Assembly: GCA_002269645.1 (NCBI GenBank)
Contig: NIVC01000365.1
Coordinates: 186,001 to 250,000, forward strand
Reading direction: 5' to 3'
DNA length: 64,000 bases
Source of the DNA: Macrostomum lignano
Lineage: Eukaryota
Positions 1 through 64,000 of this stretch are shown here, piece after piece. Each line of letters starts with the position of its first letter. Position 1 is the stretch's first letter. A model generated the notes under the pieces. The model worked only from the letters and a program-made list of their open reading frames with translations. It was not told where the DNA came from and searched no databases. Made by a program: the position numbers and the translations under genes.

Positions 1-419
1 AATATTTTTTCAATTTTTTAACATTAATAACTATGGCTATAGGAATCTATGGAATGTGACAACAACTACCATATTTCTGTAGTCGTAGCCATAAGAACAG
101 CTAGCTACCATAGGCATATCCATAGCTGCCATAGGCACCTATTTTATCATATTTGCCATAGGATCCCATAGCCATAGCTACGGCTATGGTGGAACACAAA
201 CTTCTGCCATTGGTTGCATAGCACCTAGATGCTACTGGTGTAGAACTTTGCCAGCTGGTCCTCTAGCTATTGGTTGGCAAGGCTGATGACTTATTTATTA
301 GACTTGAAATGATATGAACAAAATAGCTATTTGAGCTAACAAAATAAATAGATAGAAATCAGAAGGTGCTAGGTCAGGTTAGGGGTTAATGAAAAGGGCA
401 GCAATGCCTACTTACTATA

Positions 420-1130
420 TCTAGATGCACAGAGCCCCTTGCAATTAAGTCAAAGTAAGAAAATGCCAGATCTAGTGATTAGGCAAGATAGGGAAGGATT
501 TTGAACCCTACAATATTAGTAGAATTCACTACAACCTAGGCAGTATAAGCTAGGGCATTGTTATGAAACAACAAGAGGCTAGTACTCAGCTTCCCTTACC
601 TCTTCTAGACAACTGCCTGATGAAGCTAGCTTAGCTATTTAGCAAAGTAGATACCAAAGATAGGTATTTAGCTAGTAGGATCCTTTGATAGTAATTGAAA
701 AAAAACAGCCCAGGATCTTGATAGCTAAATTTGCTTGCTTAAACTTATGGAGGCCCTTTCCCTAGGGCACTACCACTCTATGGAATCTTGCTTAGACTTA
801 AGGTCATAGTGGTAGGTAGATCTAGTACTTATCCTTAGTTATATTTCCTTTTTTAAATCCATCTGAATTCTCATTGTAGAGGTCAAGCATAAGCCAACAT
901 GAGCTAAGTTGGTTTTGCTTGTGGTCCTATGAAAGCATTCAGGGTACCCATCAGGCATTGATCTTGTTATACCTTAGGATTTGGTATTGGAGCTCTTTTT
1001 TTGACCTAGCTTAGCTAGGTGACCTAACTAGCTAAGCTAGAAATTTTGGCAACTCAAATTGAACAAACTTTATCAAACAACTTGGCTACTGCCTCAACTT
1101 TCAAGGTTCACCCTACCATACAAATGTGTT
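420..1130 (-). mobile_element. Degenerate mariner (Tc1/mariner, DD34D-type) transposase relic, copy 1
   Basis: Minus-strand translation gives A*WVP*MLS*DHKQNQ (WVP at 950-942), ITKDKY*IY (~TGDETW, ~840-820), QRILLAKYL (~GILLxEYL), LFHNNALAYTA (~HDNAxxHTA, ~570-540) and LPYLA*SLDLA (~LPHPxYSPDLA, ~495-465). The motifs are in mariner order, with many stops and frameshifts. Confidence 0.85.
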
Positions 1131-1490
1131 GTAATGTTGCTTGATAGTATGCAGAGAAATACAAGTTATAGGGTATAACCATAGGCATATCCATAGCTGC
1201 CATAGGCACCTATTTTATCATATTTGCCATAGGATCCCATAGCCATAGCTACGGCTATGGTGGAACACAAACTTCTGCCATTGGTTGCATAGCACCTAGA
1301 TGCTACTGGTGTAGAACTTTGCCAGCTGGTCCTCTAGCTATTGGTTGGCAAGGCTGATGACTTATTTATTAGACTTGAAATGATATGAACAAAATAGCTA
1401 TTTGAGCTAACAAAATAAATAGATAGAAATCAGAAGGTGCTAGGTCAGGTTAGGGGTTAATGAAAAGGGCAGCAATGCCTACTTACTATA

Positions 1491-2201
1491 TCTAGATGCA
1501 CAGAGCCCCTTGCAATTAAGTCAAAGTAAGAAAATGCCAGATCTAGTGATTAGGCAAGATAGGGAAGGATTTTGAACCCTACAATATTAGTAGAATTCAC
1601 TACAACCTAGGCAGTATAAGCTAGGGCATTGTTATGAAACAACAAGAGGCTAGTACTCAGCTTCCCTTACCTCTTCTAGACAACTGCCTGATGAAGCTAG
1701 CTTAGCTATTTAGCAAAGTAGATACCAAAGATAGGTATTTAGCTAGTAGGATCCTTTGATAGTAATTGAAAAAAAACAGCCCAGGATCTTGATAGCTAAA
1801 TTTGCTTGCTTAAACTTATGGAGGCCCTTTCCCTAGGGCACTACCACTCTATGGAATCTTGCTTAGACTTAAGGTCATAGTGGTAGGTAGATCTAGTACT
1901 TATCCTTAGTTATATTTCCTTTTTTAAATCCATCTGAATTCTCATTGTAGAGGTCAAGCATAAGCCAACATGAGCTAAGTTGGTTTTGCTTGTGGTCCTA
2001 TGAAAGCATTCAGGGTACCCATCAGGCATTGATCTTGTTATACCTTAGGATTTGGTATTGGAGCTCTTTTTTTGACCTAGCTTAGCTAGGTGACCTAACT
2101 AGCTAAGCTAGAAATTTTGGCAACTCAAATTGAACAAACTTTATCAAACAACTTGGCTACTGCCTCAACTTTCAAGGTTCACCCTACCATACAAATGTGT
2201 T
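1491..2201 (-). mobile_element. Degenerate mariner transposase relic, copy 2
   Basis: Same sequence as copy 1, shifted by 1071 bp. Confidence 0.85.
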
Positions 2202-3404
2202 GTAATGTTGCTTGATAGTATGCAGAGAAATACAAGTTATAGGGTATATAGACTATCTCCTCTTCAATTGCTGCTGACTTTAGCCCTTTCAGGGTGAAAA
2301 ATTTAATGAGGGCTTGGTATTCTTACTTGTCCATTTGTTGAAAATCCAGAGGTTGCTTAGAATTTGTGCAGAAAAAAATATATTGAAAAAACATAAAAAG
2401 AAAACACTATGTACTATATATTTCATATAAAAGTACTTTTCAATACCAAAAAATATTCACAAAAAAGCTTTTGAAATGGCTAAATGGCAAAACTTTTGAA
2501 ACAACTTTGTAAGTTTCTTTTCGACTAAGTCATTTGTCTTTCCATAAGTTAAACAAATACAATTAAAAACAAATTAAAGATATTGTTATACCTTTTACCA
2601 TTATAGAATTTTTGCACAATAAAGTTTTCAATGCATTTTGACTTGTATTTGTAAAAATTTGTTGGAAGTTACAATCAATAGAAATATGCACTATTATATG
2701 TATACCAAAAGGATTGTATATCCTTTGTTTTTTTTAAAAGTGTCAAAGTAGTTCAGAAACGAATCATTCAAATGTTGTTTGAAATTTCTTATTAGCAACT
2801 AGCAACAAAGATTCTATGCTAAGACTTTTAAATATTATGTATTAATATAACCTTTTTTTAACAATTACACAATGATCATACAGATGATTCTATTTATTCT
2901 AATCTTTCATTTATGTAAAACCTCTAATATTTTACCTGCTAATTTTACCTGTTTTAAGATAACTTAAAACATATTAACAAAATAAAAACTTCTTATTTGT
3001 CAAACTTTGTCAAAAATATATTATTATAAAAAATTAATCAATTTTGCAACTGGTTATATCTTTGCCATAGCTTATGCTGACCAGAATAGCAATGACAAGG
3101 TTAGCTAGTAATTGTAGTTATGTATGTATATAAAAGTTTGATTAAAATAAAATACCTTGCTTTGTCTAGGCCAATCAAATTTTTTCCTCAACACTAGATT
3201 TTTTTGCTGAAAAATGGTGACAATTTTCCAGCTAGGTCCAAGATTAAGAAAGTTTTAATTAGAAAATTTAATCAAATTTTATTTTTGCTAAGTTGTTAAT
3301 GCTGCTGACAAGCATCCAATACTAGTATGAAGTAAAAATGCTACTTGTGGTGTTGCAATCACTATTCAAAATATCAACCCTTAGCAACCCAGATGCCTTA
3401 ACAA

Positions 3405-3685
3405 CAAGTACTCAAGCCTTAGCAACCAATGAAATCAGCCACCTTGGCAACCAGTACTCAAGCCTTAGCTACCAATGAAATTAGCCACCTTGGCATCCAG
3501 TACTCAAGCCTTAGCAACCGATAAAATCGGCCACCTTGGCAACCCGTAATCAAGCCTTAGCAACCAATGAAATCAGCCTCTTTGGCAGTCAGTACTCAAG
3601 CATTAGCAACCAATGAAATCAGCCACCTTGGCAACCAGTACTCAAGCCTTAGCAACCAATGAAATCAGCCACCTTGGCAACCAAT
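3405..3685. repeat. 46-nt minisatellite (CAGTACTCAAGCCTTAGCAACCAATGAAATCAGCCACCTTGGCAAC), ~6 copies
   Basis: Period 46 (AGTACTC at 3407 and 3453); ends just before the acceptor at 3696-3697. Confidence 0.9.
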
Positions 3686-3697
3686 CACCCCACCCAG

Positions 3698-13124
<9,427 letters not shown>

Positions 13125-15633: not shown

Positions 15634-17199
15634 ATGAACGACGCCGTAGACCCGGCGCTGGTCGCGCCGTCCCGTCACTGCCTGTACATCCGGGGCCTGC
15701 CGTCGCGCATCAAAGCCGACGAAGTTCGTCGCTACTTTATCGACAAAGAGGCCGACTGTTCCATCGATTTTTTCTCCTACACGGGCAGCCAGGCTGCGCT
15801 GAACATCGCCCTGCGATTCGATTCTCACGAAGTTGCCAAGCAGATCATGCGCCGGTACAATGAGTCCGGCCTGCTCGGCTGCAAAGTCAGCATAGTCTGG
15901 TTCAAGGACATGATCCGCGCCCGGCAGCGCGTCCGGGCCGACCCGCAGCTGAGGGCTCGAGTTCAGCGGGCGCAGGAGGGCCGCGGACTATCCGGTTCCC
16001 GGTCGCCGCCGCCCGCGCCTGGCTGGCGATTCGGACAGCAGGTGCGCGCCGACTCCAGCTTGGGGCCTCAGCCACCCTTGCCTCTTGTATTGTCTCACCT
16101 GTCTCTGCCTGTCCCTCACCTGTCTTTTGCCTGTCCCTCACCTGTCTCTTGCCTGTCCCTCACCTGTCTCTTGCCTGTCCCTCACCTGTCTCTTGCCTGT
16201 CCCTCACCTGTCTCTTGCCTGTCCCTCACCTGTCTCTTGCCTGTCCCTCACCTGTCTTTTGCCTGTCCCTTGCCTGTCCCTTGCCTATTCCTTGCCTGTC
16301 TTTTGCCTGTCCCTCACCTGTCTCTTGCCTATCTCTCCCCTGTCCTTCACTCGTCTCTCACCTGTTCCTCATTTTCCTTATAATACAATTGAGCAGTGAC
16401 CTCAGTCCCTCCCTGTTGTCATTCTCCTATCTACAGCTGCACTACACGCGCCCACTGCAAAGTAATCCAGTGCCTCGTGTACCTCTATCCAACAAGACTC
16501 TCACATGCCTTCCGATCCCCCTCACCCGCTAAGCAGAACCGCAGTCGGTCTGGCAGCCAGCGCCGCCGCAGTCGCAGCCGCAGCCCGACCAGCCGCAGCC
16601 GCAGCCCCAGCAGGAGCAGCAGCACTCGAAGCGCCGCCTGTCGGGGCCCGCGCAGCCCGCCAGAGGAGGACGAGGAAGCCGCGGCGACGTCAGCATCAGC
16701 GGCAAACAACGGCATCGACAATTCGAATGGCGGCGTCGAGACCCGGCGGCTGGGACCGAGGTCCCCGCCATCGCCGCCGCCCGTGTCTTCTCCGCCGCCT
16801 CCGCCTCCACCGCCGCCGCCGCCGCCAACAACATCGGCTCGGCCTTCGACATCGTCCTTGGCAACGCCGCTTCAGCCGCCGTCGTTGCCGCAGATGTCGC
16901 AGCCGCCGTTTTGCGACGCCGACAATCACGGCGTTAGCGCCGATGCCGGCGACGGCATCCTGCGTCTGGTGCGCGCCAAGAAGGCCGAATTGGAGCGAGC
17001 CTACAGGCAGGACTGCGACACCTTCGCTGTGGTGGCCAAAGTGCTGGTTAGCAAGAATTCCAGCTTGGAAGGCCCGGTGCGCGACGCTCTGCGCGAAGCT
17101 CTGCGCGACATTGGGCAGCACTGCGTGGAGGAGTTGCGCGAGTTCGCCCGCACTCTGGCCATCGCTCAGCAGCAGCGCCAGCCGGCTGGCCAGCGATGA
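15634..17199 (+). CDS. PPHLN1: RRM + RS-rich + periphilin C-terminal-domain protein (~356 aa)
   Basis: Exon 1 15634-16041 contains RRM-like LYIRGLP...LRFDSHEVAKQIMRRYN..LLGCKVSIVW. Exon 2 is 16534/16537-17199 (NAGNAG acceptor) with SRSRS repeats, polyPro and KKAELERAYRQDCDTFAVVAKVLVSKNSSLEGPVRDALREALRDIGQHCVEELREF. This matches the periphilin C-terminus as I recall it (EIEQVYRQDCETFGMVVKMLIEKDPSLE...LHEIGERCVEELKHF). Confidence 0.85.
16097..16370. repeat. 22-nt minisatellite CCTGTCCCTCACCTGTCTCTTG in the periphilin intron
   Basis: Direct tandem copies. Confidence 0.9.
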
Positions 17200-51600: not shown

Positions 51601-54600
51601 CAATTAAGGTGTTGTCGCAAATAGGAAGCGGAGGTGAGGCGGGGATTTCAAATGCTGCAGTCAGCTGATGATGCAAAACAAAGCCAATTCAGAGAGCTGC
51701 TTTGGTCTCTATAGTAACTCACCTTCACATTGGTGTAGGCATTTCCAACTTTCTCCTCGAACGATTTAAACGCGTTAGAATTGCGCATTGATGACCATTT
51801 CTGCGAGAAGCTGCTAGCCATGCTGTGCGTGAGCTCTGAGGTCCGCTCCTTGGCGCCCTTGGCCGCGCTGGCCGTGCGCTGGTACCTGCCGGGTTCAGGT
51901 AAACACATCTAGTTATTGCAGCTGGCTTCTCCCGTCTGAAACATTGCTGACAGTAGAACCTAAATCAAACGTCGGGGGCTCGATTCCGGGGTTAACTGTG
52001 AGATATTCAGAGCCTTCTGTCTTCCTTCCTTTCCTTCCATCCTTCCCTTCCTTCCTTTAATTCCTTTCCTTCCTTTCCTTTCTTCCTTCCTTCCTTCTTT
52101 TCTTTCCTTCCTTTCTTTCCTTCCTTCCTTCCTTTCCTTCCTTTCTTCCTTCCTTCCTTTCCTTCCTTCCTTTCTTTCCTTCCTTGCTTCCTTTCCTTCC
52201 TTTCTTTCTTCTTTCCTTCCTTCCTTCTTTCCTTCCTTTCCTTCCTTTCTTTCCTTCCTTCCTTCCTTTCTTTCCTTCCTTCCTTCCTTCCTTCCTTCTT
52301 TTCTTTCTTTCCTTCCTTTCTTTCCTTCCTTCCTTCCTTCTTTCCTTCCTTCCTTCCTTCCTTCCTTTCTTTCCTTTCCTTCCTTTCCTTCCTTCCTTCC
52401 TTCCTTCCTTTCTTTCCTTTCCTTCCTTTCTTTCCTTCCTTCCTTCCTTTCCTTCCTTTCCTCCTTCCTTCTTTTCTTTCCTTCCTTTCTTCCTTCCTTC
52501 CTTCCTTCCTTCCTTCTTTTCTTTCCTTCCTTTCTTTCCTTCCTTCCTTCCTTCCTTCCTTCCTTCCTTTCTTCCCTTCCTTCCTTCCTTCCTTCCTTCC
52601 TTCCTTCCTTTCTTCCTTCCTTCTTTTCTTTCCTTCCTTTCTTTCCTTCCTTTCTTTCCTTCCTTCCTTCCTTCCTTCCTTCCTTTCTTCCCTTCCTTCC
52701 TTCCTTCCTTCCTTCCTTCCTTCCTTCCTTTCTTCCTTCCTTCTTTTCTTTCCTTCCTTTCTTTCCTTCCTTTCTTTCCTTCCTTCCTTCCTTCCTTCCT
52801 TCTTTCCTTCCTTCTTTCCTTCCTTCCTTCCTTCCTTCTTTCCTTCCTTTCTTCCCTTCCTTTCTTCCCTTCCTTCCTTCCTTCCTTCCTTCCTTCCTTC
52901 CTTCCTTCCTTCCTTCTTTCCTTCCTTCCTTCCTTCCTTCCTTCCTTCCTTCCTTCCTTCCTTCCTTCCTTCCTTCCTTCCTTCCTTCCTTCCTTCCTTC
53001 CTTCCTTCCTTCCTTCTTTTCTTTCCTTCCTTTCTTTCCTTCCTTTCTTCCCTTCCTTCCTTCCTTCCTTCCTTCTTTTCTTTCCTTCCTTTCTTTCCTT
53101 CCTTTCCTTCCTTCCTTCCCTTCCTTCCTGCTACTTCTGATAATTCGCCTGTTAAAAAGGCAACCAAACGCAGATATTCAATAGCCTACTGCTAGTAGGC
53201 AACACGAGATACTATGCGCTTTTTAAAACAATATAAAAAGCAAAAAAATTGAAGTCGAATGCTGCTGTGAGCTCAGTGGTGGAACCGGGTCAGATGGGAA
53301 TCGAGGAGGAGGAGGGGCAATAAAAATGGGGGAGGGGCGGGGGACTCTCATGGGAAGCAGTGGGGCAGAAGTTCAAACAAGTGTTAGGGGAAAAAGAGGT
53401 CCAGTGAAAGGGGAGCGAACGGAGCAGAAATGGGAGCTCAAGGGCTGGCAGCGGGACAAAAACTAGGGCTGCAAAAAATGGGTTCGCTGTGAATCCGATT
53501 TTGTGAAACAAAATTATTGGCTAATTGTGATTGCGGCAAGACCTGGCAAAGTGCAATTTTCCCTTCTCTCAGCGCGTGTCAGATTTCTAAGGGGTTCATG
53601 TTTGGGATCCTACTACTCGTAGATATTAAGGGCGATTCCTCAGCACAGGCTCAGGGGCGATTCTTCGAGATAGGCTCAGGGGCGATTCTTCAGGACAGGC
53701 TCAGGGGTGATTCTACGAGACAGGCTCAGGGGCGATTCTTCGAGACAGGCTCAGGGGCGATTCTTCAGGACAGTTTCAGGGGTGATTCTTCGAGAAAGGT
53801 TCAGGGGCGATTCTTCAGGACAGGCTCAGGGGCGATTTTTCAGGACAGGTTCAGGGGCGATTCTTCGAGACAGGCTCAGGGGCGATTCTTCGAGACAGGC
53901 TCAGGGGCGATTCTTCAGGACAGTTTCAGGGGTGATTCTTCGAGAAAGGTTCAGGGGCGATTCTTCAGGACAGGCTCAGGGGCGATTTTTCAGGACAGGT
54001 TCAGGGGCGATTTTTAAGGACAGGTTCAGAGGTGATTCCTCAGGACAGACGCAGGGGCGATTCTTCGAGACAGACTCAGGGGCGATTCTTCGAGACAGGC
54101 TCAGGGGCGATTCTTCAGGACAGGTTCAGGGGTGATTCTTCGAGAAAGGTTCAGGGGCGATTCTTCAGGACAGGCTCAGGGGCGATTTTTCAGGACAGGT
54201 TCAGAGGCGATTCCTCAGGACAGGTTCAGGGGCGATTCTTCAGGACAGGTTCAGGGGCGATTCCTCAGCACAGGCTCAGGGGCGATTCTTCAGGACAGGT
54301 TCAGAGGCGATTCCTCAGGACAGGTTCAGGGGCGATTCTTCAGGACAGGTTCAGGGGCGATTCCTCAGCACAGGCTCAGGGGCGATTCCTCAGGACAGGT
54401 TCAGGGGCGATTCTTCAGCACAGGCTCAGGGGCGATTCTTCAGGACAGGTTCAGGGCGATTCCTCAGGACAGACGCAGGGGCGATTCTTCAGGACAGGTG
54501 CAGGGGCGATTTTTCAGGACAGGTTCAGAGGTGATTCCTCAGGACAGGTTCAGAGGCGATTTCTCAGGACAGGTTCAGGAGCGATTCCTCAGGGCAGGTT

Positions 54601-57600
54601 CAGGGATTTCTCAGGGCAGATTCAGGATGACTCCCCAGGATTCAAGCTTGAAACTCAATCTGTCAGTTGCCAACGACTGACAGCCGCAGGCGAGTTCAGC
54701 TCACGTGTCAGACTCCTTCCAGTGCTGCAGGGAGCTGCGCAGCTCGCCAAACACGGTGATGCCCAGCTTCCGTTTCAAATCGTTGGCGTGCCGGATCTTG
54801 GACGACAGCACCTGGCGGAGCGTCTGGATCTCCTCCTCTGTCTGCAGGCAAGCGAGAGGGTGGGAATAGCAGTGAGGATACCGGGCATTAACTATGCAGA
54901 TTTGGCTCTTTGTGACTACCTGGATACATTCCAGTTATCCTCTATGACCAAATATGGAGAATTCATACCTTTCCATAACACACTGAGGAAAATTCATACC
55001 CTCCATAACACACTGGGGAGAATTCATACCCTCCATAACACACTGAGGAGAATTCATACCCTCCATAACACACTGGGGAGAATTAATACCCTCCATAACA
55101 CACTGAGGAGAATTCACACCCTCCATAACTGTAGTGTACGCCCCCTCTATGCCTTCACGCTTTTCTCTGACTAGCTTTCGCCCTCTTGTCCAACGTGCAC
55201 TAGCACTGGCCCCGTCAACCGTTGCGTAACACTGTAGCCGCACGTCGGCAGTGAGTTGATATAATAGCTCAAATATACGGTCCACGAGACCAGGTTTTTC
55301 GCCACACACAAGCGCACTACAATGGCGTCGCAAGCTAGCCTACCCACACCGCCCCCATTGAACTTGCGCGAGGAGCCCCATGCGGCACATACAAAGTGGA
55401 GCAAGTGGTTGGCTCAGTTCCAGCTGTTCGCCGCGGCCGCTGACATCTCTGATAAGAAGCGACTTCGCCAACTCCTTCTATATACAGCGGGCGAGGACCT
55501 ACAGGCCATTGCAGCCGGTCTCGCCGAAACCGGTGATGACGTCGACAAGCTCATTAAGGCTCTCAATGAGCACTTCATCAGCCAGCTCAACTTGCCCTTC
55601 ACACGCTACCAGTTCCGTCGGTGCATCCAGCAGACCGGAGAGTCCCTGGAAGACTGGCTGCGGCGGCTCAACGACACCGCGGACTGCTGTAAGTTCGAAG
55701 GCCTCAGGGACTCTCTGATCCGCGACCAGCTGATTGCCGGCTGCAACTCCGAGCAGCTCCGCAGGAAGCTGCTGGCCATGGACAACGTGGACCTGGGCCA
55801 GGCGGTCCGGGTGGCCAGGGCCATGGAGGCAGCGGAGTCGCAGGCCAGCCTCATGGAGACCAGCGCAGCGACCGTGCAACGGCTGCGGAAGCGCGAGTTC
55901 AGCCCGCCAGAGCAGCCGCAGAGATCAGCCACGCAGGCAGCCGATCGCACGCAGCCAAAGTGCATCCGCTGCGGCAACTTCGGCCACCGCAGCTGTAGCG
56001 CAGCGGTAGGCAAGACCTGCAACCGATGCGGCAAGCCGAATCACCTCGCCAAGGCCTGCCTGTCCCGGCCAGAGGACGTGCGAGCCCTGCGGGTCGGCAG
56101 CGACAGTTCAGGCGCAGAGGACGAGGTCTTCTGCCTGACCGTGATGGCCTCCGACACGAACGCGGCAGCAGCCCTTGCCACGGTGCTGGTAGAAGCGACT
56201 CCAGTGCAGGTGCTGGTGGACAGCGGAGCCGACTGTAACATCCTCACCGAGGAAGCCTGGCGAAAGCTCCCGGGACCCCCAGGCCTGCAGCCGACGACAA
56301 AGAGGATCTTTTCATTTCGATCAGAGAGACCTCTGCGCACTCTGGGAGTCTGCAGCCTGCAGGTCTCGGTCGGCCGGAGGGTCCAACGCGTCAGCTTCAT
56401 CATCGTCCCCGGGAGCGGCACCAGTGTGCTCGGCCGTGCAACCTCGACATCCCTGCAGCTGCTGAGTCTAGAGACGCAGGCCCAGGCACCGGCCAGAGAG
56501 GCGACAAGGCCGATCGATGCTCTAAACGACGAGCCACCAGCCCAGGACGGAGTACTGCTGCAGCAGCTCAACACCGTCAAGTCTGCACCGGAGGACCCGA
56601 CCATCGAGAGCGTCCGCGAGGCCACCGCGCGGGACCCGGCTCTGAACTTCGTCATGCAGGCGCTGGCGATTGGCAACTGGCGCTCCGGCGCTACAGCCCA
56701 GGCCGACAGCTTCCACTCGCTCAAGGGAGAGCTCCGGGTGCGTGACGGTGTGCTGCTCAGGGACAGCAGGATCGTTGTACCCGCAGCGCTTCAGCAGCAG
56801 ACCATCAGTTGGGCCCACCAGAACCGATTCGGCTGGAGGAAGTCCATCGACCCGCTGCGGAGGAAATTCTGGTGGCCCGGCATGGCGCGGCAGGCACAGA
56901 CGGCTCTGTCAAAGAGACGCCAGAACGAGGACATCCGAAGCGGTGGCCCGTGCAAGGCGCTTCCGGACGGCCGACAGAGGACGGCAGACACAGCAGGGAA
57001 GTCGGACGTTCAACAGCTGTCGGAGCTCGACTGGAAGCTGGTGACAAGACGGCGCAAGCCGCTGCTTTCAAGCTGCTGCCAGGTGACCGAAGCTGTACGA
57101 CGGCCTCTGGGAGGTCTACCGGCTGCACGACAGCACGTCAGCAAACCACGAGGTCGTAGCAACACAGCCGCAACCTACTAACTCGATGAATTATACATGT
57201 ACATGCATGCGTAAATTTAGCCTAATTGCAGACTGACACAACTTTTCCGAAATTTCGTTCCGCTAATCTAATTATAGGCTTTGTACTTTTTTGGTTGGAG
57301 GAGAGATGTAGTGTACGCCCCCTCTATGCCTTCACGCTTTTCTCTGACTAGCTTTCGCCCTCTTGTCCAACGTGCACTAGCACTGGCCCCGTCAACCGTT
57401 GCGTAACACTGTAGCCGCACGTCGGCAGTGAGTTGATATAATAGCTCAAACATACGGTCCACGAGACCAGGTTTTTCGCCACACACAAGCGCACTACAAT
57501 AACACACTGAGGAGAATTCATACCCTCCATAACACACTGGGGAGAATTAATACCCTCCATAACACACTGAGGAGAATTCATACCCTCCATAACACACTGG

Positions 57601-60600
57601 GGAGAATTCATACCCTCCATAACACACTGGGGAGAATTAATACCCTCCATAACACACTGGGGAGAATTCATACCTTCCATGATTACCTGAGGAGAAGTGA
57701 GGTTATCCACTGTATCCACTGCCTTAGTAGATAAGGTCATAACCACCTAGAGAATCCAGACTTTTGTGAGGAAGTTCTTACACGCGGGCAAGCATCAGGT
57801 ACAAGACAATGACGAAATGAATAACCAAGAGGACCAAGCGGCACGAATATATTAAGGCAAACACGTCACAAAAGAAGTCAGGGCAGAAGCATGAAAAAAT
57901 AAAATATTGGCATAGAGCACCAGCAGGAGCAGCTGAAGGAGAAAGACGGACGGTTGTAAAGCGGACCAAACTAATCTCCCTCCTCTGCTCTCCCTACGGT
58001 CCACTTCCCGGGTCCAGCAATTTTCCCTCAATTCGCTCCAAGCCGCACACAGATCGAGAGAAAAATAGGAAAACGGGGGAGTGAAAGCCAAGGAGAGAAA
58101 ACGAGCCACCCCTCGTGCGGTAGGGAGGATTTGTCCGCTGTAAAATGGGATTTTAAAATCTGTTCACTGTGCCATTTTTGTCCCAACTTCAGTTTCTTAT
58201 TTTCCTATTGTTGCTTAGCTTTAAAATTTGTATATACGAAAGTGAATTACGCAACATATTGGAAAAAAATAACATTGCAGTTTTCAGTCTACTAAAGCTA
58301 AGTCATTGAAATTTTAAGTCATTTAGAAGCTAGAATAGATCAGGCTTAGCTAATCTAGAGGCTAGAATAGATCAGTCTTAGCTAATCTAGAGACTAGAAT
58401 AGATCAGCCTTAGCTAATCTAGAGACTAGAATAGATCAGTCTTAGCTAATATAGAGACTAGAATAGATAAATCAGGCTTAGCTAATCTAGAGGCTAGAAT
58501 AGATAAATCAGGCTTAGCTAATCTAGAGGCTAGAATAGATAAATCAGGCTTAGCTAATCTAGACGCTAGAATAGATAAATCAGGCTTAGCTTATCTAGAG
58601 GCTAGAATAAATCAGTCTTAGCTTATCTAGACGCTAGAATAGATAAATCAGGCTTAGCTTATCTAGAGGCTAGAATAGATAAATCAGGCTTAGCTAATCT
58701 AGAGGCTAGAATAGATAAATCAGGCTTAGCTAATCTAGAGGCTAAAATAGATAAATCAGGCTTAGCTAATCTAGAGGCTAGAATAGATCAGGCTTAGCTA
58801 ATCTAGAGGCTAGAATAGATCAGGCTTAGCTAATCTAGAGGCTAGAGTAGAGCAGGCTTCACTAATTTAGAGGCTAGAATACGAGTAGATCAGGCTACGC
58901 TAATCCAGAGGCTAGAATAGATCAGGTCTATTGAATGTCGCTTTTAGTTAATAGAGCCTCTTTAATTCTTTGATTAAACTTCATCTTCATTGCATGTCCT
59001 TACCTTTTCGTACAAATCTTCAAATTTTAACTATTTTCGATATTTTAATAAGAGTGGCACTATTAAAATAGAATACAGACACAAACAATTATTCACTTTA
59101 ATCTTGCCGCCACAGACTAGATACACCAGACAGAATTCGCAGACTTGTGTCTCCGATCCCCTTCCTCAGACTGAAGCGACAGAGCGCGAAGGAACCGGGT
59201 GAAGAATGGAAACCCGGCCGGAAAGCAGTTAAGAGGCAAATGAAAGCCAACCTTAAGTCCAAGTGGATTAGCCTGCCCATTAATCCGTTCTGTCGGGTCT
59301 TCAGTGAATATATTCTGCATCAATAATTCACCGCTCAGACCGACCTCTCCGACCTCCCCTCCGAGGCGGAGGTACACTTCGAGAAACAGCTAGCCTTCTT
59401 ATCGTTTATACCGTATTGTAGAGCCGGAAGCCAATTATTAGCCAGAGCAATATGGCACAATAATAAAGCATTTCAATGATAAAATTGACAAGATCAGTCC
59501 ATATTGAACTGGGACACAGACTCGAACTCCGACCCGTGAGCCATAATGGTCAAGAGATGTGACCCGTGAGTCATAATGGTCATAATCATGTGACCCGTGA
59601 GCCATAATGGTCATAATCATGTGACCCGTGAGTCATAATGGTCGTAAACATATGACCCGTGAGTCATAATGGTCAGAGATGTGACCCGTGAGTTATAATG
59701 GTCATAATCATGTGACCCGTGAGCCATAATGGTCATAATCATGTGACCCGTGAGTCATAATGGTCATAATCATGTGACCCGTGAGTCATAATGGTCAGAG
59801 ATGTGACCCGCGAGTCATAATGGTTATAATCATGTAACTCGTGAGTCATAATGGTTATAATCATGTAACTCGTGAGTCATAATGGTTATAATCATGTAAC
59901 TCGTGAGTCATAATGGTCATAATCATGTGACCCGCGATTCATAATAGTCAGGCCTGTGAGTTATAATGGTCATAATCATGTGACCCGCGAGTCATAATGG
60001 TGAGGCCTGTGAGTCATAATGGTCATAAATGCGACCCATGGGTCATAATGGTCATAGGCACTCACTAAGGGCATTGATGCGACCCAAACTGGTCAAGGAA
60101 ATGGACAAATAACCACAAATTTAAAAAAGGTCAGAATTATCACCTTTTCCAGCTCCTGAGCCCACTCCCTGCGCTGGTGCTCTCGCTCCTCAGGTGACAT
60201 GGCCTGCAGTCTGTCAGCTTCCTCCTGTTGGCTATCTCCAAGCCCATTGTCACCATGATCGCCCTGGTCACCATAGAGACCTGGATCTATAAAGCAAGAA
60301 AGTGGAAACCTCTTAGGATTTTTTAGAAAAAAAGGGCAGTAAACAAACTTTAATAATTGACTTGGATTTTTCTTCTGTTCTATAGCTACATAATAAAATA
60401 ATCATCGAATGGTCTACAAGCTACCAAGTTGTAGCACTTAGAACTCTGAATGCCAAGTTTGAGTCTTGGTGGGACCCTGTGCCAATGATTTTTATTTATC
60501 TTTAAACTTAGACATTCTAAGTCTAGGTTTGGAGCTTAGATTTAAAACTTGTCTGCATACTTATTCATGGCTGCCTTAGGTAGAAAATATTTTGCCATCT

Positions 60601-61500
60601 TTACAACTTGCTTGATTTCTAATGCAATTATTTTACACTAGTCAGTATCAGCGTTGGGCTCATAAGCTTGAGGTTAATTATATTTTTCTAATGCAATGCA
60701 AAGGCACTAATTAAATTATTTAAGGTCAATCTATCAAATTAACTATTTTTTGTACTAGAATCCTTTTTTTTAAATTGTTAGCTAGCACTTTTAAGGCTAC
60801 TAGAATAATATATCACTGATTCTAAATGAGTCAGCAGTATAAAAGTATACTCATATTATATTATAAAATAATAAAAGTATAATTTCTATAAAACTATAGC
60901 AAAGTAAAGCAATGAAAATGACTTAAACAATTGGAAAATTGGCTGAAGTTTTTTATATATTGTGATACAATTATTTTCATTGGCCAAAAATTATTTCTAT
61001 ATATACTTCTTAACAGTCAAATAAATCAAATGGTAATCAACAACAATAAAAAAGAAAATTATTCTATTTTATATCTAATAAATGAATTCAATAAATGATA
61101 TAAAAAAATTAAATCAAAACAAATAATAATTAAATGGCTTTATTTTTAGAAAAGATTTCAATTACCTTACTCAATAACTTATTCACAAAGCTATCAAACC
61201 TCAAATGTACGAGTTTAAATTATTTAATTTCACTAAAATAAAGCAGACACTGAGACACATAGAAACAGGCCATCAAACCTCAAAGTTACAACTTTAAATT
61301 TTTAATTTTACTAAAATAAAGCAAAGTCTTGCAATCCTTGCATAGAAACAAAAATAAAAACATGTTTGGAATCAAAGTATAAACATAATATAAATAAAAA
61401 TAAAAATAGCTGTCTATCATTGAAATCAATGTGAATATAATGCACTGTTATATTATAATTCACGCATCAAAATATTACCCTGGTAGTTAGTGTTGTCCAT
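47124..61500 (-). CDS. TPD52: Tumor protein D52-family coiled-coil protein (~198 aa)
   Basis: Exons 61500-61479, 60286-60144, 54841-54705, 51885-51723, 47255-47124 (597 nt, phases 1/0/2/0). Sequence: [18 protein letters not shown]|[28 protein letters not shown] and [15 protein letters not shown]. Paralog (D52/D53/D54) is not resolvable. Confidence 0.9.
47905..48640. repeat. (GACA)n microsatellite
   Basis: Direct observation. Confidence 0.96.
48662..49924 (-). CDS. Intronless 420-aa Leu/Ala/Arg-rich (probably alpha-helical) orphan nested in the last TPD52 intron
   Basis: ATG-to-TGA ORF of 1263 nt, non-repetitive, with the same GC3-rich codon use as neighbouring genes and AT-rich or satellite flanks. 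No family recognised. Confidence 0.7.
50515..51505. repeat. ~29-33-nt minisatellite CACGAGCCGTGACATCTTAGCAATTCCCC (variable C-run)
   Basis: ~32 copies in the TPD52 last intron. Confidence 0.93.
52015..53130. repeat. (CCTT)n/(TTTC)n microsatellite
   Basis: Direct observation. Confidence 0.96.
53630..54625. repeat. 25-nt minisatellite GGGGCGATTCTTCAGGACAGGTTCA
   Basis: Period 25 (53654, 53679). Confidence 0.94.
55130..57498 (+). mobile_element. Young non-autonomous Ty3/Gypsy-type LTR retrotransposon (2369 bp)
   Basis: 192-bp LTRs 55130-55321 and 57307-57498 with one mismatch seen; termini TGTAGTG...CACTACA; 5-bp TSD ATAAC; PBS-like TGGCG at 55323; purine tract before the 3' LTR. Confidence 0.95.
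55322..57181 (+). CDS. Gag-protease-truncated integrase N-terminal fusion ORF (619 aa)
   Basis: Gag-like [11 protein letters not shown]...LIRDQLIAG; Zn knuckles [12 protein letters not shown] and [14 protein letters not shown]; aspartic protease [11 protein letters not shown]; integrase-N-like [10 protein letters not shown]...WAH...FWWPGM. No RT (YxDD), RNase H or DDE core. Confidence 0.88.
   Translation: MASQASLPTPPPLNLREEPHAAHTKWSKWLAQFQLFAAAADISDKKRLRQLLLYTAGEDLQAIAAGLAETGDDVDKLIKALNEHFISQLNLPFTRYQFRRCIQQTGESLEDWLRRLNDTADCCKFEGLRDSLIRDQLIAGCNSEQLRRKLLAMDNVDLGQAVRVARAMEAAESQASLMETSAATVQRLRKREFSPPEQPQRSATQAADRTQPKCIRCGNFGHRSCSAAVGKTCNRCGKPNHLAKACLSRPEDVRALRVGSDSSGAEDEVFCLTVMASDTNAAAALATVLVEATPVQVLVDSGADCNILTEEAWRKLPGPPGLQPTTKRIFSFRSERPLRTLGVCSLQVSVGRRVQRVSFIIVPGSGTSVLGRATSTSLQLLSLETQAQAPAREATRPIDALNDEPPAQDGVLLQQLNTVKSAPEDPTIESVREATARDPALNFVMQALAIGNWRSGATAQADSFHSLKGELRVRDGVLLRDSRIVVPAALQQQTISWAHQNRFGWRKSIDPLRRKFWWPGMARQAQTALSKRRQNEDIRSGGPCKALPDGRQRTADTAGKSDVQQLSELDWKLVTRRRKPLLSSCCQVTEAVRRPLGGLPAARQHVSKPRGRSNTAATY
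58335..58925. repeat. ~32-38-nt TAG-rich minisatellite GATCAGGCTTAGCTAATCTAGAGGCTAGAATA
   Basis: Direct tandem copies in TPD52 intron 2. Confidence 0.92.
59525..60055. repeat. 31-nt minisatellite GTGACCCGTGAGTCATAATGGTCATAATCAT
   Basis: Direct tandem copies. Confidence 0.92.
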
Positions 61501-61800
61501 AGTAGCAGGCCAAAAGTGGAGCTAAAAGTTTAAAACGAACGGACGACCTGTAGAATAAATAATAAATTGACCAATTGACCAATTTTGAAGCTTCAAGCGC
61601 GCTTTTACCAAGGACGAGTTTATATAGTTTCTTCGAAAACCGTTTATCGTGGGTTTGGGTAGAAAAACAAATGAATCATATCACTGTATGTAAAAAGCTC
61701 TAAAGTAGGCAAATACGCCCAGAATTTTCAAAAAAGTTACAAGCGGAGTTAAAAAACTATTTTTCAGACAATCAGAGTTGATTTCAGTTTGTGAGACGGA
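61501..61800 (-). promoter_or_regulatory. Probable TPD52 5' UTR/promoter region (local CpG-retaining patch)
   Basis: CpGs cluster here (GCGCGC, AACCGTTTATCGTGG, ATACGCCC) while the flanks are nearly CpG-free. An acceptor-like TTCTACAG lies ~50 nt upstream of the ATG. Confidence 0.35.
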
Positions 61801-62579
61801 TATTTTAACTCTAGATAGATTAGCAAGCTGAATGTCTACACTCTGGCTAAGAATAGCAACACTATCTTCACATTGATTATTAAAAGGATTAGCTTGGAGA
61901 TTTACCATTCTCATCTTACCATCTCTCAAGAGCAGATTTATTTAGGGGGTGGCCACTTCCCCTTTGTGGCTGGCAATGATGGCGCCCCTTTTCCTTTTGG
62001 CTGGCAGTCCTAAATTTTTTTCTGAACTATTTATAAGTGATTAACTCCAAAACAGTGAAGATGTAGAATAAAAGTGCTAGAAAACATAAGCATAAAAGTT
62101 GCTTGACTAAAATAACTTTATATTGTCTATCAGCTCAGTTCTTTATCAAAAAGGTATTTTATCTTTAGTTTCAATATATTATAGCACCTCCACTCTTATG
62201 CAGTATGCTATGTTAAAATTTGCCCCTCTTCATTTTATATTTCTAAATCTGTCTCTTTATATAGCATTCATAGAGCTAAAATTGTTTATTGCATTATATG
62301 ACAATAAATTATTGATTGTGTAATAACAATAATAAATAATAATAATAATAATAATAAACAAAATAGGCCTATACATGATGAGTTGTATGGATTTCATTAG
62401 GCCTATAACAAACTTTATGGTCAATATTTTTTTGTTTTATTATTAACTTGTTAAATAAATAATTTTATATAAATTATCAATCTATTATTTTAAACTGATA
62501 CTAGCAATCCAGCCTATTTGGGAAGCACAAAAATGAAAATAAAAATTATGGCTGAAAATATTAAAGAATGGACCTATGC

Positions 62580-62785
62580 TTCCAGTAAGCCTTGACATCT
62601 CAGCAATTCCCCTATAAGCCTTGATATCCTAGTAATTCCCCCATAGGGCTTGACATCCCAGCTATTCCTTCCATAAGCCTTGACATTCCAGCAATTCCCT
62701 ATAAGCCTTAACATCTCTGCAAATCCCCCCATAAGTCTCAATGTCTTAGCAGTTCTCTTAGCAAGTCTTGACATTTTAGCAATTT
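62580..62785. repeat. Degenerate relic of the 50515-51505 minisatellite family, ~7 copies
   Basis: Units such as CATAAGCCTTGACATTCCAGCAATTCCC versus CACGAGCCGTGACATCTTAGCAATTCCCC. Confidence 0.75.
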
Positions 62786-64000
62786 ATCAATAAATATTTT
62801 TTTTTGTTTTACAAGATGCTCCGTTTATGCTTGAGTTGAACTTGTGCTTCTTTTATGTTTAGCATAATATTTTTTTCACATAGTGATCCTTTTTATAAGC
62901 TTTAATCACAAAGCTTAAAAAATAATAACAATTTTTTCTACTGAAATTTGAATGTAGTTGCTGCTTCAGCAGCTCTGTCTGTTTGCATCTAGGCTAGCTT
63001 TCATTGATCAATATGCTCATACATGAATTGTAGCACTTATAATTCAACTCATATCATATTAGTTAGAGTAAAAGTCATGATGTAATTTATTTCTCATTCA
63101 TTCCGTGTCAGTCACAATTAAAGTAAGCAATTCAACTATACAATATGAATCAAGTCTTGTGCTAAATGCTTCCACACTGTGTACTTCAAAGTGGTGGTGC
63201 AGTTGAATTCAGTGTTAAAATTCATCTAGTACATAGACAATAAATAGAATTTTGGTGTGATGCAATCTATTTTAGAATCAGAATTCAACCAGTCAGTTTT
63301 TTTCTAGCATTTTTACAATGCATTTCAAGTCAAAAGAGCTACTTGACCTTTGCAAAAAAGCATTTTTTTTCAAATATTTAATCCCTTTAGCATTCAGCAA
63401 TTTCTTAGCCAAGACCCATGTACCATCACAAAAAAATTTCTGATTGAACAGTGCAAGTTTGAACAAAATTGGTTAAGCCATTTTTTCTATTTCTATTATC
63501 AATTGCACAGACAAACAGACAAAGACAGCTTAGATTTAGATTTAGAATATATAGAAGAAGAAGATATAGCAAAATCTTAGAGATTCAATATTATCAAAAT
63601 CTATAGTAGTGCTATTCAAGCATGTAGTCAAGATTTATATTAGGCCTAAGAGGAGGGGGACAGAATATTAATCTATCTCCAATGTTGAAAATGGAAGCAA
63701 AATAAAAAGGCAATCAAACAACTCCTCTCCTATCTAGGGGGGGAGGGGAGATATCTCTAGTGTCCCCCTTTGGCTATACCCCTAGTGCTAATAACTTATA
63801 CTTATAGACTTTTTCGATAGGGTACTGCCTATATGAAGGTATTAGAATTTATGAAAGATATTGATTTTTTTCTTATTAATAAATCTTAATTTAGAATTCT
63901 ATGCCTATGGCCTATGAATATTTAGTACATGATAGATAGCAAAACTTTAATGTTGATAGTTTTAATAAACCCTATTATTCAAATAAAGTTGTTTTCATAA

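What the first reader, a model, noticed from the sequence alone, without database searches (positions are those of the whole stretch)
420..2201. Mariner relic destroyed by RIP-like C>T hypermutation at CpG and CpA in an animal genome
Seen: the minus strand retains the mariner motifs in order, and the readable lesions are mostly C>T or G>A. Examples against consensus: ARWVPRMLSQD becomes A*WVP*MLS*D (CGA>TGA twice, CAG>TAG); DETW becomes DKY* (GAG>AAG after T, TGG>TAG); HDNA becomes HNNA (catGAC>catAAC); the HTA His becomes Tyr (CAT>TAT); SPDL becomes SLDL; xEYL becomes AKYL (gctGAA>gctAAA). The region is nearly CpG-free and rich in TA/CTAG. Established: ordinary 5mCpG decay stops at TpG/CpA, whereas conversion of CpA/TpG to TpA is the hallmark of fungal repeat-induced point mutation. 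Inference: this animal may have a CpA-directed mutagenic process, either non-CG methylation plus deamination or a deaminase, that inactivates transposons. Ancestral codons were inferred from motif consensus, not from an intact copy.
Basis: partly seen in the sequence, partly recalled or inferred. Interest (0 to 1): 0.88.

Follow-up and report, generated by a model that had tools for sequence, protein, structure and literature searches.

The report
Cytosine-decayed mariner relic in flatworm
A dead mariner transposon in the flatworm Macrostomum lignano has lost every CpG and about a third of its cytosines to C-to-T changes, a decay pattern seen in transposon copies but not in neighbouring DNA, which fits germline DNA methylation reaching beyond CpG better than a fungal-style repeat-induced mutator.

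Summary
Window 420-2201 is not one relic. It covers 1.66 copies of a perfect 1071-bp tandem duplication (107-1177 = 1178-2248) inside a DD34D mariner. The mariner starts at about 2511 and is split near its 3' end by a 603-bp TIR element. The genome matches Macrostomum lignano Mlig_3_7 in size and contig number.

I compared the relic with extant GC-rich family copies. It shows 82 C>T/G>A changes against 3 T>C and 19 transversions. Per-site rates are CpG 0.68, CpA 0.41, CpT 0.22 and CpC 0.17. No CpG is left in 1241 bp, and 16 of 19 in-frame stops need only C>T/G>A. Other decayed copies, a second mariner family and, more weakly, an unrelated repeat show the same ordering, with CAG the hottest non-CpG site.

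Neighbouring GC-rich non-mariner DNA, polarised across three subgenome copies, shows a flat spectrum, so generic AT drift is rejected. RIP proper is not supported. CpG is the top target, there are no strand-coordinated runs, perfect duplicates are unmutated, and only DNMT1, DNMT2 and DNMT3 are found.

The best explanation is transposon-targeted 5mC deamination that extends to non-CG sites. This is inferred from mutational footprints, not measured.

The parts
1272..2511 (-). Mariner relic, first pass: element positions ~1 to ~1243 of a ~1300-bp DD34D mariner. Includes the 5' TA + ITR remnant at ~2479-2511 and transposase homology for aa 1-340 of 349.
   Evidence: blastn to family copies, alignment, tblastn map. 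The intact family ORF hits Pfam Transposase_1 at 2e-18.
2254..2334 (-). Transposase N-terminus (MDK*EYQALIKFFTLKGLKSAAIEEEI), upstream of the duplicated block.
   Evidence: tblastn aa 1-27, 78% identity.
1178..2248 (.). Tandem unit B (1071 bp): mariner aa ~30-340 plus the first 94 bp of repeat X.
   Evidence: Every base equals the base 1071 bp away; family D2. The same two-unit structure is present at C1762 and C592.
107..1177 (.). Tandem unit A, 100% identical to unit B.
201..1177 (-). Second copy of the mariner interior (aa 30-340), created by the tandem duplication.
   Evidence: tblastn HSPs at 1178-699, 814-446 and 350-195.
1..200 (-). Repeat X: a 603-bp AT-rich TIR element with GTGTTC-type ends and a 6-8 bp target duplication (CTTCTG), inserted into the mariner 3' region. 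It continues to about 402 bp left of the window. Its first 94 bp are also copied at 1178-1271.
   Evidence: 81-95% matches to many genomic copies; extent and junctions.
1178..1271 (-). The 94-bp piece of repeat X carried inside tandem unit B.
1450..1545 (-). An internal insertion or duplication of about 100 bp. It gives two SPDLAPSDF-like motifs: SLDLAFSYFDL at 1549-1517 and PDLAPSDFYLF at 1449-1417. The same feature is at 379-474 in unit A.
   Evidence: alignment gap; tblastn; sequence.
2077..2111 (.). A 35-nt CTAG-rich near-palindrome (CTAGCTTAGCTAGGTGACCTAACTAGCTAAGCTAG) with a ~10-bp insertion relative to the family. It is repeated at 1006-1040.
   Evidence: the repeat finder I1; alignment.

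Best explanation
The locus is an old DD34D mariner insertion in Macrostomum lignano.

The order of events at the locus is shown by the sequence:
1. The mariner inserted.
2. A 603-bp TIR element inserted into its 3' region.
3. A 1071-bp internal tandem duplication followed.
4. The whole locus was carried into the three subgenome copies of the assembly.

The mechanism of decay is inferred. While the copy was still GC- and CpG-rich it sat in germline-methylated chromatin maintained by the worm's DNMT1 and DNMT3. 5-methylcytosine deaminated to thymine on both strands over many generations. All CpGs were lost, mostly to TpG or CpA. A lower level of DNMT3-type non-CG methylation, in the order CAG > CAC/CAA/CAT ~ CTG > CCN, drove further C>T changes. 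These turned CpA/TpG into TpA, created TAG/TAA/TGA stops and CTAG motifs, and pulled GC from ~0.50 down to 0.37.

The process is confined to transposon copies, because neighbouring CpG-replete DNA shows neither the CpG nor the CpA effect. It works like methylation-driven transposon decay in vertebrates and plants, not like duplication-triggered RIP.
For: Spectrum in the relic:
- 82 C>T against 3 T>C and 19 transversions.
- Per-site rates: CpG 0.68, CpA 0.41, CpT 0.22, CpC 0.17.
- CpA against CpT+CpC: p = 6e-4. Non-CpG C>T against T>C: p = 1e-18.

The same ordering appears elsewhere:
- Eight other decayed copies of this family.
- An independent mariner family, where for example L084 has 47 C>T and 0 T>C.
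- More weakly, repeat X.
- Young 94-98% identical copies show mainly CpG>TpG with a smaller CpA component. Pooled rates are CpG 0.14, CpA 0.027, CpT and CpC 0.007, T>C 0.

Context tests with sites as units, in both families:
- CAG against CAH: 0.53 vs 0.29 (p = 0.002) and 0.12 vs 0.064 (p = 0.013).
- CWG against CHH: p = 8e-5 and p = 4e-4.
- CCG is cold.

Strands and accumulation:
- C>T on the top strand is 67/224 and G>A is 73/227, and a runs test gives z = 0.7.
- By my own calculation from the tallies, C>T roughly tracks the other changes from copy to copy, which fits gradual accumulation.

Enzymes and organism:
- G000 encodes DNMT1, DNMT3 and DNMT2, each in three subgenome copies (ORFs). 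Against PDB the E-values are 1e-63, 8e-21 and 4e-26.
- G000 has 764,410,778 bp in 5269 contigs, which matches Mlig_3_7 with 5270 scaffolds and 764.42 Mb (PMC5730564).

Control: in GC 0.50 non-mariner DNA of the same window, polarised across three subgenome copies, there are 40 C>T (CpG 11/2834, CpA 11/3468, CpT 7/3696, CpC 11/3040), 26 T>C (of 13236 sites) and 50 transversions. That spectrum is flat.

From established knowledge, not tested here: mammalian DNMT3 enzymes methylate non-CG sites in the order CA > CT > CC with CAG/CAC preferred, and methylated cytosines mutate faster in all contexts in plants.
Against: - No methylation was measured. The whole argument rests on mutational footprints.
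- Global 5mC in M. lignano is reported as low.
- In the older copies CAG is as mutable as CpG (0.53 against ~0.50). That would require substantial germline non-CG methylation, which is not documented at that level in any invertebrate.
- Even CpC mutates several times faster than T>C. Part of the non-CpG excess could therefore come from something other than 5mC.
- The CpG:CpA ratio differs between young and old copies and between the two mariner families.
- The control sample is small (116 polarised changes) and may include assembly errors.
- The copies are not fully independent lineages.
Confidence: 0.55

Rival explanations
1. CpG methylation only. The non-CpG C>T excess would come from a compartment effect in silenced, late-replicating transposon chromatin. 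Candidates are slower repair of uracil, higher mutability of bases next to 5mC, or DNMT-catalysed deamination of unmethylated target cytosines. No appreciable non-CG methylation would be involved.
For: - All C contexts are elevated, including CpC at 0.17 against T>C at 0.012.
- In decayed AT-rich paralogue groups the recent spectrum keeps the order CpG>CpA>CpT>CpC at a much lower amplitude.
- A preprint reports that methylation raises the mutability of neighbouring bases (bioRxiv 10.1101/764753, listed; abstract only read).
Against: - The specific CAG > CAH and CWG > CHH preference, with CCG cold, recurs in two families. It looks like an enzyme's flanking-sequence preference rather than a regional effect.
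- The neighbour effects reported elsewhere are, to my knowledge, much smaller than the 10-30-fold effect seen here.
Confidence: 0.2
2. A cytosine deaminase (AID/APOBEC-like or another type) is directed at transposon DNA and edits it. This would be a dedicated mutagenic defence.
For: - There is an extreme C>T excess with few other changes. L049 has 49 C>T against 1 T>C and L048 has 42 against 2.
- The effect is specific to transposon copies.
Against: - There are no strand-coordinated runs, and both strands are hit equally.
- The specificity lies on the 3' side (CG, CA), not the 5' side typical of APOBECs. The 5' neighbour effect is weak and inconsistent between the families.
- No APOBEC_N or NAD1 match was found in G000. 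This is a weak negative, because the search is exon by exon and NAD1 rang in none of the 14 control genomes.
- A cut-and-paste DNA transposon exposes little single-stranded DNA.
Confidence: 0.1
3. True RIP-like process: a premeiotic, homology-triggered mutator that recognises duplicated DNA and converts C to T, as in Neurospora.
For: - Only repeated elements (two mariner families and repeat X) show the signature.
- TpA/ApT rises from 0.57-0.69 in intact copies to 1.24 in the relic.
- CpA is the preferred non-CpG context.
Against: - CpG is the top target. The substrate index is 1.36 and the composite index is -0.12.
- The perfect 1071-bp tandem duplicate has no differences.
- Large segments triplicated at 96-99% identity show no C>T bias.
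- The young multi-copy family lacks a non-CpG burst.
- No RID-like DNMT class was found.
- A multi-copy transgene line has been transmitted stably for more than 50 generations (PMC5730564).
Confidence: 0.07
4. Generic AT-biased neutral drift that affects all old non-coding DNA of this genome.
For: - AT-rich decayed DNA seems close to compositional equilibrium. Recent changes are 30 C>T and 21 T>C, a per-site ratio of about 2.4.
- AT-rich, CpG-poor stretches also occur at the other end of the window.
Against: - The control GC-rich DNA shows a C>T:T>C per-site ratio of only ~1.5 and no CpG or CpA effect, which differs from the relic at p = 2e-8 and 2e-10.
- A per-site ratio of about 26:1 in the relic would drive GC far below the 0.28-0.40 observed if it applied generally (my own estimate).
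- A diverged but GC-rich copy, L080, shows 4 C>T, 6 T>C and 13 transversions.
Confidence: 0.05

Closest known systems
Decay of methylated transposons by 5mC deamination (vertebrate genomes; plant transposons methylated at CG, CHG and CHH)
   Same: C>T/G>A dominates and falls on both strands. CpG is the hottest site and is eventually eliminated. The effect is restricted to silenced repeats while neighbouring unmethylated DNA keeps its CpGs. DNMT1 and DNMT3 are present.
   Different: The non-CpG component is large here (CpA 0.41 and CAG 0.53 per site), more like plant CHG/CHH-methylated transposons than any animal case I know of. No chromomethylase is present. No methylome is available to confirm it.
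Fungal repeat-induced point mutation (RIP; Neurospora RID/DIM-2 dependent)
   Same: The outcome is similar: transposon copies are riddled with C>T/G>A, with many new stops, a raised TpA/ApT ratio, CpA>TpA conversions and AT-rich relics.
   Different: CpG, not CpA, is the prime target. CpA/TpG are not depleted. There are no strand-biased runs. Perfect and near-perfect duplicates are untouched. No RID-type enzyme is found. Accumulation appears gradual rather than burst-like.
DNMT3-dependent non-CG methylation in mammals (mCAG in embryonic stem cells and oocytes, mCAC in neurons)
   Same: The context hierarchy CA > CT > CC, with CAG/CAC on top, matches the mutational footprint.
   Different: In mammals it leaves no strong evolutionary footprint on transposons. 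Here the inferred footprint rivals that of CpG.
AID/APOBEC hypermutation of retroelements
   Same: Element-specific excess of C>T/G>A.
   Different: APOBEC editing is strand-asymmetric, clustered and defined by the 5' neighbour. None of these is seen here, and the target is a DNA transposon.

Membership tests
mariner (Tc1/mariner superfamily, DD34D) | Transposase with the mariner DDE/D catalytic domain (Pfam Transposase_1) and the HDNA...SPDLAPSDF spacing. | tested here: met
   The relic aligns to aa 1-340 of an intact 349-aa family ORF. That ORF hits Transposase_1 at 2e-18. I counted 34 residues between the HDN Asp and the PSD Asp in the family ORF. The relic's own fragments are too decayed for Pfam.
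mariner (Tc1/mariner superfamily, DD34D) | An element of about 1.3 kb bounded by short terminal inverted repeats and a TA target site. | tested here: met
   Family copies are ~1300 bp with 32-34-bp ITRs. The relic keeps a mutated 5' end (TACAAAG... at ~2511). Its 3' ITR lies left of the window, beyond repeat X.
Fungal RIP | Mutations are almost exclusively C>T/G>A transitions. | tested here: met
   82 C>T against 3 T>C and 19 transversions.
Fungal RIP | Dinucleotide signature: CpA is the prime target, TpA/ApT is 0.89 or more, and (CpA+TpG)/(ApC+GpT) is 1.03 or less. | tested here: not met
   The product index is 1.24, which meets the threshold. The substrate index is 1.36 and the composite index is -0.12. 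CpG (0.68) exceeds CpA (0.41).
Fungal RIP | Triggered by sequence duplication, so all sufficiently long and similar copies are hit. | tested here: not met
   The two 1071-bp tandem units are 100% identical. Paralogous segments at 96-99% identity show a flat spectrum. The young 94-98% identical family shows mostly CpG changes. Multi-copy transgenes have been transmitted stably for more than 50 generations (PMC5730564).
Fungal RIP | Depends on a RID-type (or DIM-2-type) cytosine methyltransferase homologue. | tested here: not met
   The PF00145 search of G000 finds only three gene classes. They were identified as DNMT1, DNMT3 and DNMT2. The search is exon-wise, so a very divergent gene could be missed.
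5mC-deamination decay of methylated repeats | CpG hypermutability (CpG>TpG/CpA) that is specific to the repeat and absent from unmethylated neighbouring DNA. | tested here: met
   All 20 ancestral CpG dinucleotides in the relic are gone: 7 to CA, 6 to TG, 5 to TA and 2 to other states. The control DNA shows a CpG>T rate of 11/2834, no higher than other contexts.
5mC-deamination decay of methylated repeats | Maintenance and de novo methyltransferases are present. | tested here: met
   DNMT1 and DNMT3 exons are found in G000. The literature agrees.
5mC-deamination decay of methylated repeats | 5mC is actually present on these elements in the germline. | not testable with these tools
   No methylome data are reachable. 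The paper that reports M. lignano methylation (Wasik 2015) is not held.
DNMT3-type non-CG methylation footprint | Context order CA > CT > CC, with CAG/CAC preferred. | tested here: met
   In the relic's family, CA is 0.36 against CT+CC 0.15 (p = 1e-7) and CAG is 0.53 against CAH 0.29. In the second family, CAG is 0.12 against 0.064. This is a mutational footprint only.
AID/APOBEC hypermutation | Strand-coordinated clusters and specificity set by the 5' neighbour. | tested here: not met
   Runs-test z values lie between -0.6 and 1.7 in 12 copies, and C>T equals G>A. The 5' neighbour effect is weak and inconsistent.
AID/APOBEC hypermutation | An AID/APOBEC-family deaminase gene is present. | tested here: inconclusive
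   No APOBEC_N or NAD1 hit at E of 0.01 or less. The tool itself warns that the NAD1 answer does not show absence.
Plant-type CHG methylation (chromomethylase CMT3) | A chromomethylase gene and symmetric CWG targeting. | tested here: not met
   CWG is enriched over CHH in the footprint. No fourth DNMT class was found.

The most novel reading that the evidence does not exclude
Macrostomum lignano may have a transposon-directed cytosine-to-thymine mutagenic defence that acts at CAG/CAC/CTG as strongly as at CpG. That would be a functional animal counterpart of RIP. It would be implemented either by enzyme-catalysed deamination (by DNMT3/DNMT1 themselves or by an unrecognised deaminase) or by unusually dense germline non-CG methylation, and it would turn young GC-rich transposons into AT-rich, CpG-free relics.
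Probability: 0.15. Interest if true: 0.9.

Novelty: new variant of a known kind. Interest (0 to 1): 0.55.

Why it matters
[quoted passage not shown] M. lignano is the flatworm model that retains both DNMT1 and DNMT3.

The footprints found here predict three things:
- The worm's low global 5mC is concentrated on transposons.
- Methylation extends to non-CG sites, with CAG > CAC/CTG.
- It has shaped a mosaic genome of GC-rich, CpG-replete DNA and AT-rich, CpG-free transposon relics.

If confirmed, this would be an invertebrate example of transposon-targeted methylation with a plant-like non-CG component. It would also be a heritable mutational route to transposon inactivation in an animal. The prediction can be tested directly with existing bisulfite or long-read data and with RNAi in a laboratory line.

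If the non-CG part turns out not to be methylation, a new transposon-specific mutagenic process would be implied.

Tried and rejected
I did not attempt it another way.
The three-way control is therefore limited to about 13 kb of counted sites.
3. The paper that reports M. lignano methylation (Wasik 2015) is not held. Literature searches for RIP-like or non-CpG transposon hypermutation in animals or in Macrostomum found nothing relevant.
4. Pfam on read-through fragments of the relic gave no hit. Family membership rests on tblastn to family copies.
5. APOBEC_N and NAD1 searches were negative but weak.
6. A first tally from near-identical paralogue groups yielded few changes, mostly from already decayed DNA. 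It serves only as a secondary control.
7. The AT-rich, CpG-poor right end of the window (58-64 kb) has no mariner homology and was not pursued.
8. I considered that the relic belongs to an AT-rich subfamily with a different codon usage. I rejected this because 19 in-frame stops, 16 of them pure C>T/G>A products, show decay after inactivation.
9. I considered that the tandem duplication is an assembly artefact. I rejected this because all three paralogous loci carry the same two units.
Full report
**What is at the coordinates.**

Read on the minus strand, window 2334-2254 encodes MDK*EYQALIKFFTLKGLKSAAIEEEI, the N-terminus of a mariner transposase. The homology continues downstream. With an intact 349-aa ORF from a family copy as query (L061), tblastn maps the protein onto the window as follows:
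- aa 1-27 to 2334-2254
- aa 29-201 to 2252-1770
- aa 163-290 to 1885-1517
- aa 289-340 to 1421-1266

The E-values are 3e-24 to 8e-27. That family ORF hits Pfam Transposase_1 at 2e-18. Family elements are about 1300 bp long with 32-34-bp inverted ends. The relic keeps a mutated 5' end at about 2511 (TACAAAGTTGTTTCAAAAG against the family's TACGAGGGGGGTTCAAAAAG).

Window 107-1177 and 1178-2248 are identical at every base, so they form a perfect 1071-bp tandem duplication.

Each unit holds mariner aa ~30-340 plus the first 94 bp of an unrelated, abundant, AT-rich repeat, which I call X. X is a 603-bp element with GTGTTC-type inverted ends. It is flanked by a CTTCTG target duplication of 6-8 bp. 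It split the mariner near its 3' end, and the remaining ~100 bp of the mariner, with the 3' ITR, lie about 400-500 bp left of the window start.

The order of events is:
1. mariner insertion
2. insertion of X
3. the 1071-bp tandem duplication
4. copying of the whole locus

Step 4 follows because the same two-unit structure is present at 99.8-100% identity on contigs C1762 and C592. Those contigs are colinear with the window over tens of kilobases.

**Organism.**

G000 has 764,410,778 bp in 5269 contigs. The Mlig_3_7 assembly of Macrostomum lignano has 5270 scaffolds and 764.42 Mb (PMC5730564). The difference of one scaffold and about 14 kb fits a missing mitochondrial scaffold, but that is my inference.

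That assembly is known to hold three paralogous subgenomes, S, L1 and L2 (PMC10733133). This explains the three copies of the locus.

**Checking the substitution spectrum.**

The nearest relatives of the relic are only 65-75% identical to it. In a tree the relic sits in a star-like group of long-branched decayed copies, next to GC-rich copies of the same family.

Instead I counted only sites where two separate groups of extant GC-rich copies agree (982 sites) and compared each decayed copy with that shared state.

The relic shows 82 C>T/G>A, 3 T>C/A>G and 19 transversions. Per-site C>T rates by 3' neighbour are:

| Context | Mutated / sites | Rate |
|---|---|---|
| CpG | 19/28 | 0.68 |
| CpA | 33/81 | 0.41 |
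| CpT | 17/78 | 0.22 |
| CpC | 13/77 | 0.17 |
| T>C (for comparison) | 3/249 | 0.012 |

CpA against CpT+CpC gives Fisher p = 6e-4. Non-CpG C>T against T>C gives p = 1e-18.

Dinucleotide fates in the relic:
- The 20 ancestral CpG became 7 CA, 6 TG, 5 TA and 2 other states. None remains CG.
- 20 of 52 CpA are now TpA.
- 19 of 46 TpG are now TpA.

One pass of the relic has no CpG in 1241 bp and 17 CTAG against 4.2 expected. Intact copies have 0-3 CTAG.

Of 19 in-frame stops in 307 comparable codons (11 TAG, 5 TAA, 3 TGA), 16 need only C>T/G>A. Several are CGG>TAG two-step conversions.

**Is it peculiar to this copy?**

No. Eight other decayed copies of the family give the same picture. C>T against T>C is 71:3 in L037, 80:2 in L041, 52:4 in L040, 53:5 in L073, 49:1 in L049 and 42:2 in L048.

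A diverged but GC-rich copy, L080, has 4 C>T, 6 T>C and 13 transversions. Young copies that are 94-98% identical show mainly CpG changes with a smaller CpA component.

A second, unrelated mariner family behaves the same way. L084 has 47 C>T and 0 T>C. Pooled younger decayed copies give CpG 0.27, CpA 0.058, CpT 0.026, CpC 0.033 and T>C 0.007.

Repeat X shows the same order at lower amplitude: 0.23, 0.095, 0.063 and 0.049, with T>C 0.023.

**Finer context.**

I took sites as units and pooled lineages. CAG is the hottest non-CpG context in both mariner families:

| Comparison | Relic's family | Second family |
|---|---|---|
| CAG vs CAH | 0.53 vs 0.29, p = 0.002 | 0.12 vs 0.064, p = 0.013 |
| CWG vs CHH | p = 8e-5 | p = 4e-4 |

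CCG is cold in both. The 5' neighbour has no consistent effect.

C>T and G>A on the top strand are equal (67/224 and 73/227 in the relic). They are also randomly interleaved, with runs-test z between -0.6 and 1.7 in 12 copies.

**Is it generic AT drift?**

I aligned GC 0.50, CpG-replete, non-mariner DNA of the same window (4.2-9.6 kb and 29.1-43.2 kb) with its two paralogues and counted singletons on the two polarised lineages:

| Change | Count / sites |
|---|---|
| C>T, all contexts | 40 |
| C>T at CpG | 11/2834 |
| C>T at CpA | 11/3468 |
| C>T at CpT | 7/3696 |
| C>T at CpC | 11/3040 |
| T>C | 26/13236 |
| Transversions | 50 |

This spectrum is flat, with neither a CpG nor a CpA effect. It differs from the relic at p = 2e-8 (C>T:T>C) and p = 2e-10 (non-CpG C>T against all other changes).

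Recent changes within already decayed AT-rich paralogue groups show a per-site C>T:T>C ratio of only about 2.4, with the same context order. So the strong C>T pressure is specific to transposon copies while they are still C-rich, and it fades later.

**Mechanism.**

G000 encodes three cytosine-5 methyltransferase genes, each in three subgenome copies. Their exons match DNMT1 (E = 1e-63), DNMT3A/B (8e-21) and DNMT2 (4e-26) among solved structures. No fourth, RID-like or chromomethylase-like class appears.

Reviews state that M. lignano retains DNMT1 and DNMT3 and has low 5mC, and that methylation patterns are unknown in free-living flatworms. No APOBEC_N or NAD1 domain was detected, which is a weak negative.

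The simplest reading is germline methylation aimed at transposons. CpG methylation would account for the total loss of CpG. DNMT3-type non-CG methylation would account for the graded non-CpG decay, since its known order CA > CT > CC with CAG/CAC preferred matches the footprint (that order is established knowledge, not tested here). Methylation itself was not measured, so this step is inference.

**Why not RIP.**

- CpG outranks CpA.
- TpA/ApT is raised (1.24 against 0.57-0.69 in intact copies). However, (CpA+TpG)/(ApC+GpT) is 1.36, not 1.03 or less, and the composite index is -0.12.
- There are no strand-biased runs.
- The perfect tandem duplicate, the triplicated subgenomes and the young multi-copy family have escaped.
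- No RID-type enzyme was found.
- A multi-copy transgene line has been transmitted stably for more than 50 generations (PMC5730564).
- By my own calculation from the tallies, C>T roughly tracks the other changes from copy to copy. That suggests gradual accumulation rather than bursts, although the counts are small.

**Verdict.**

There is a transposon-specific C>T process that reaches CpA (especially CAG) as well as CpG in an animal, and it is not generic drift. It behaves like methylation-driven decay, not like repeat-induced point mutation.

I found no prior report of this footprint in flatworms in the held literature. The strong non-CG component, if confirmed by methylomes, would be unusual for an invertebrate.

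**Limits.**

- The counts are small.
- The decayed copies are not fully independent lineages.
- The control is about 13 kb from one locus and may include assembly errors.
- No methylation data were available.

Noticed in passing
window 107-2248; also G000:C1762:116272-118413 and C592:209787-211928: There is a perfect 1071-bp tandem duplication spanning the mariner interior and 94 bp of another repeat. It is present in all three subgenome copies. The units are 100% identical in this window and differ by 0-2 mismatches elsewhere.
   Followed up: yes
window 1-5000 compared with 4200-43200, and their paralogues on C592 and C1762: The three subgenome copies are ~99.9% identical across the AT-rich relic region. 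They are only 94.5-98.7% identical in the GC-rich, minisatellite-rich remainder of the same window. Possible causes are gene conversion, read mis-polishing in the assembly, or a real difference in mutation rate. This is unexplained.
   Followed up: partly
window 1-200, 1178-1271 and about 400 bp left of the window (C365:185599-186200): Repeat X is a 603-bp AT-rich non-autonomous element with GTGTTC-type inverted ends and a 6-8-bp target duplication. It has many copies at 81-95% identity and is inserted in the mariner's 3' region.
   Followed up: partly
window 16393-17199 (+): An open frame carries a Periphilin C-terminal domain (Pfam E = 1e-22). From my own knowledge, periphilin is a subunit of the vertebrate HUSH transposon-silencing complex. 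Finding it near a silenced-transposon locus is probably coincidental.
   Followed up: no
window 55268-57181 (+): A 637-aa open frame carries PNMA-like gag, aspartyl protease and integrase zinc-finger domains, so it is part of an LTR retroelement. I only observed it and made no reconstruction.
   Followed up: no
window 3350-60050: The window is packed with about 50 distinct micro- and minisatellite arrays with periods of 4-176 bp. Examples are (CTGT)n at 4965-6779, a 23-bp array at 7784-8831 and (CTTC)n at 52021-53129. They produce extreme local GC and AT skews.
   Followed up: no
window 1006-1040 and 2077-2111: A 35-nt CTAG-rich near-palindrome lies inside the relic, where the family copies have ordinary coding sequence. 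It includes a ~10-bp insertion.
   Followed up: no
window 60001-64000: There is a second AT-rich (GC 0.30-0.33), CpG-depleted (o/e 0.07-0.42) stretch at the right end of the window. It has no mariner homology. One 285-bp piece matches the flank of locus L054. It may be another decayed repeat.
   Followed up: partly
G000:C112, C866, C3325 (DNMT1); C305, C2545, C3236 (DNMT3); C33, C2943, C2045 (DNMT2): Each of the three methyltransferase genes is present in three copies with open exons. This is consistent with retention of all three genes on all three subgenomes.
   Followed up: partly
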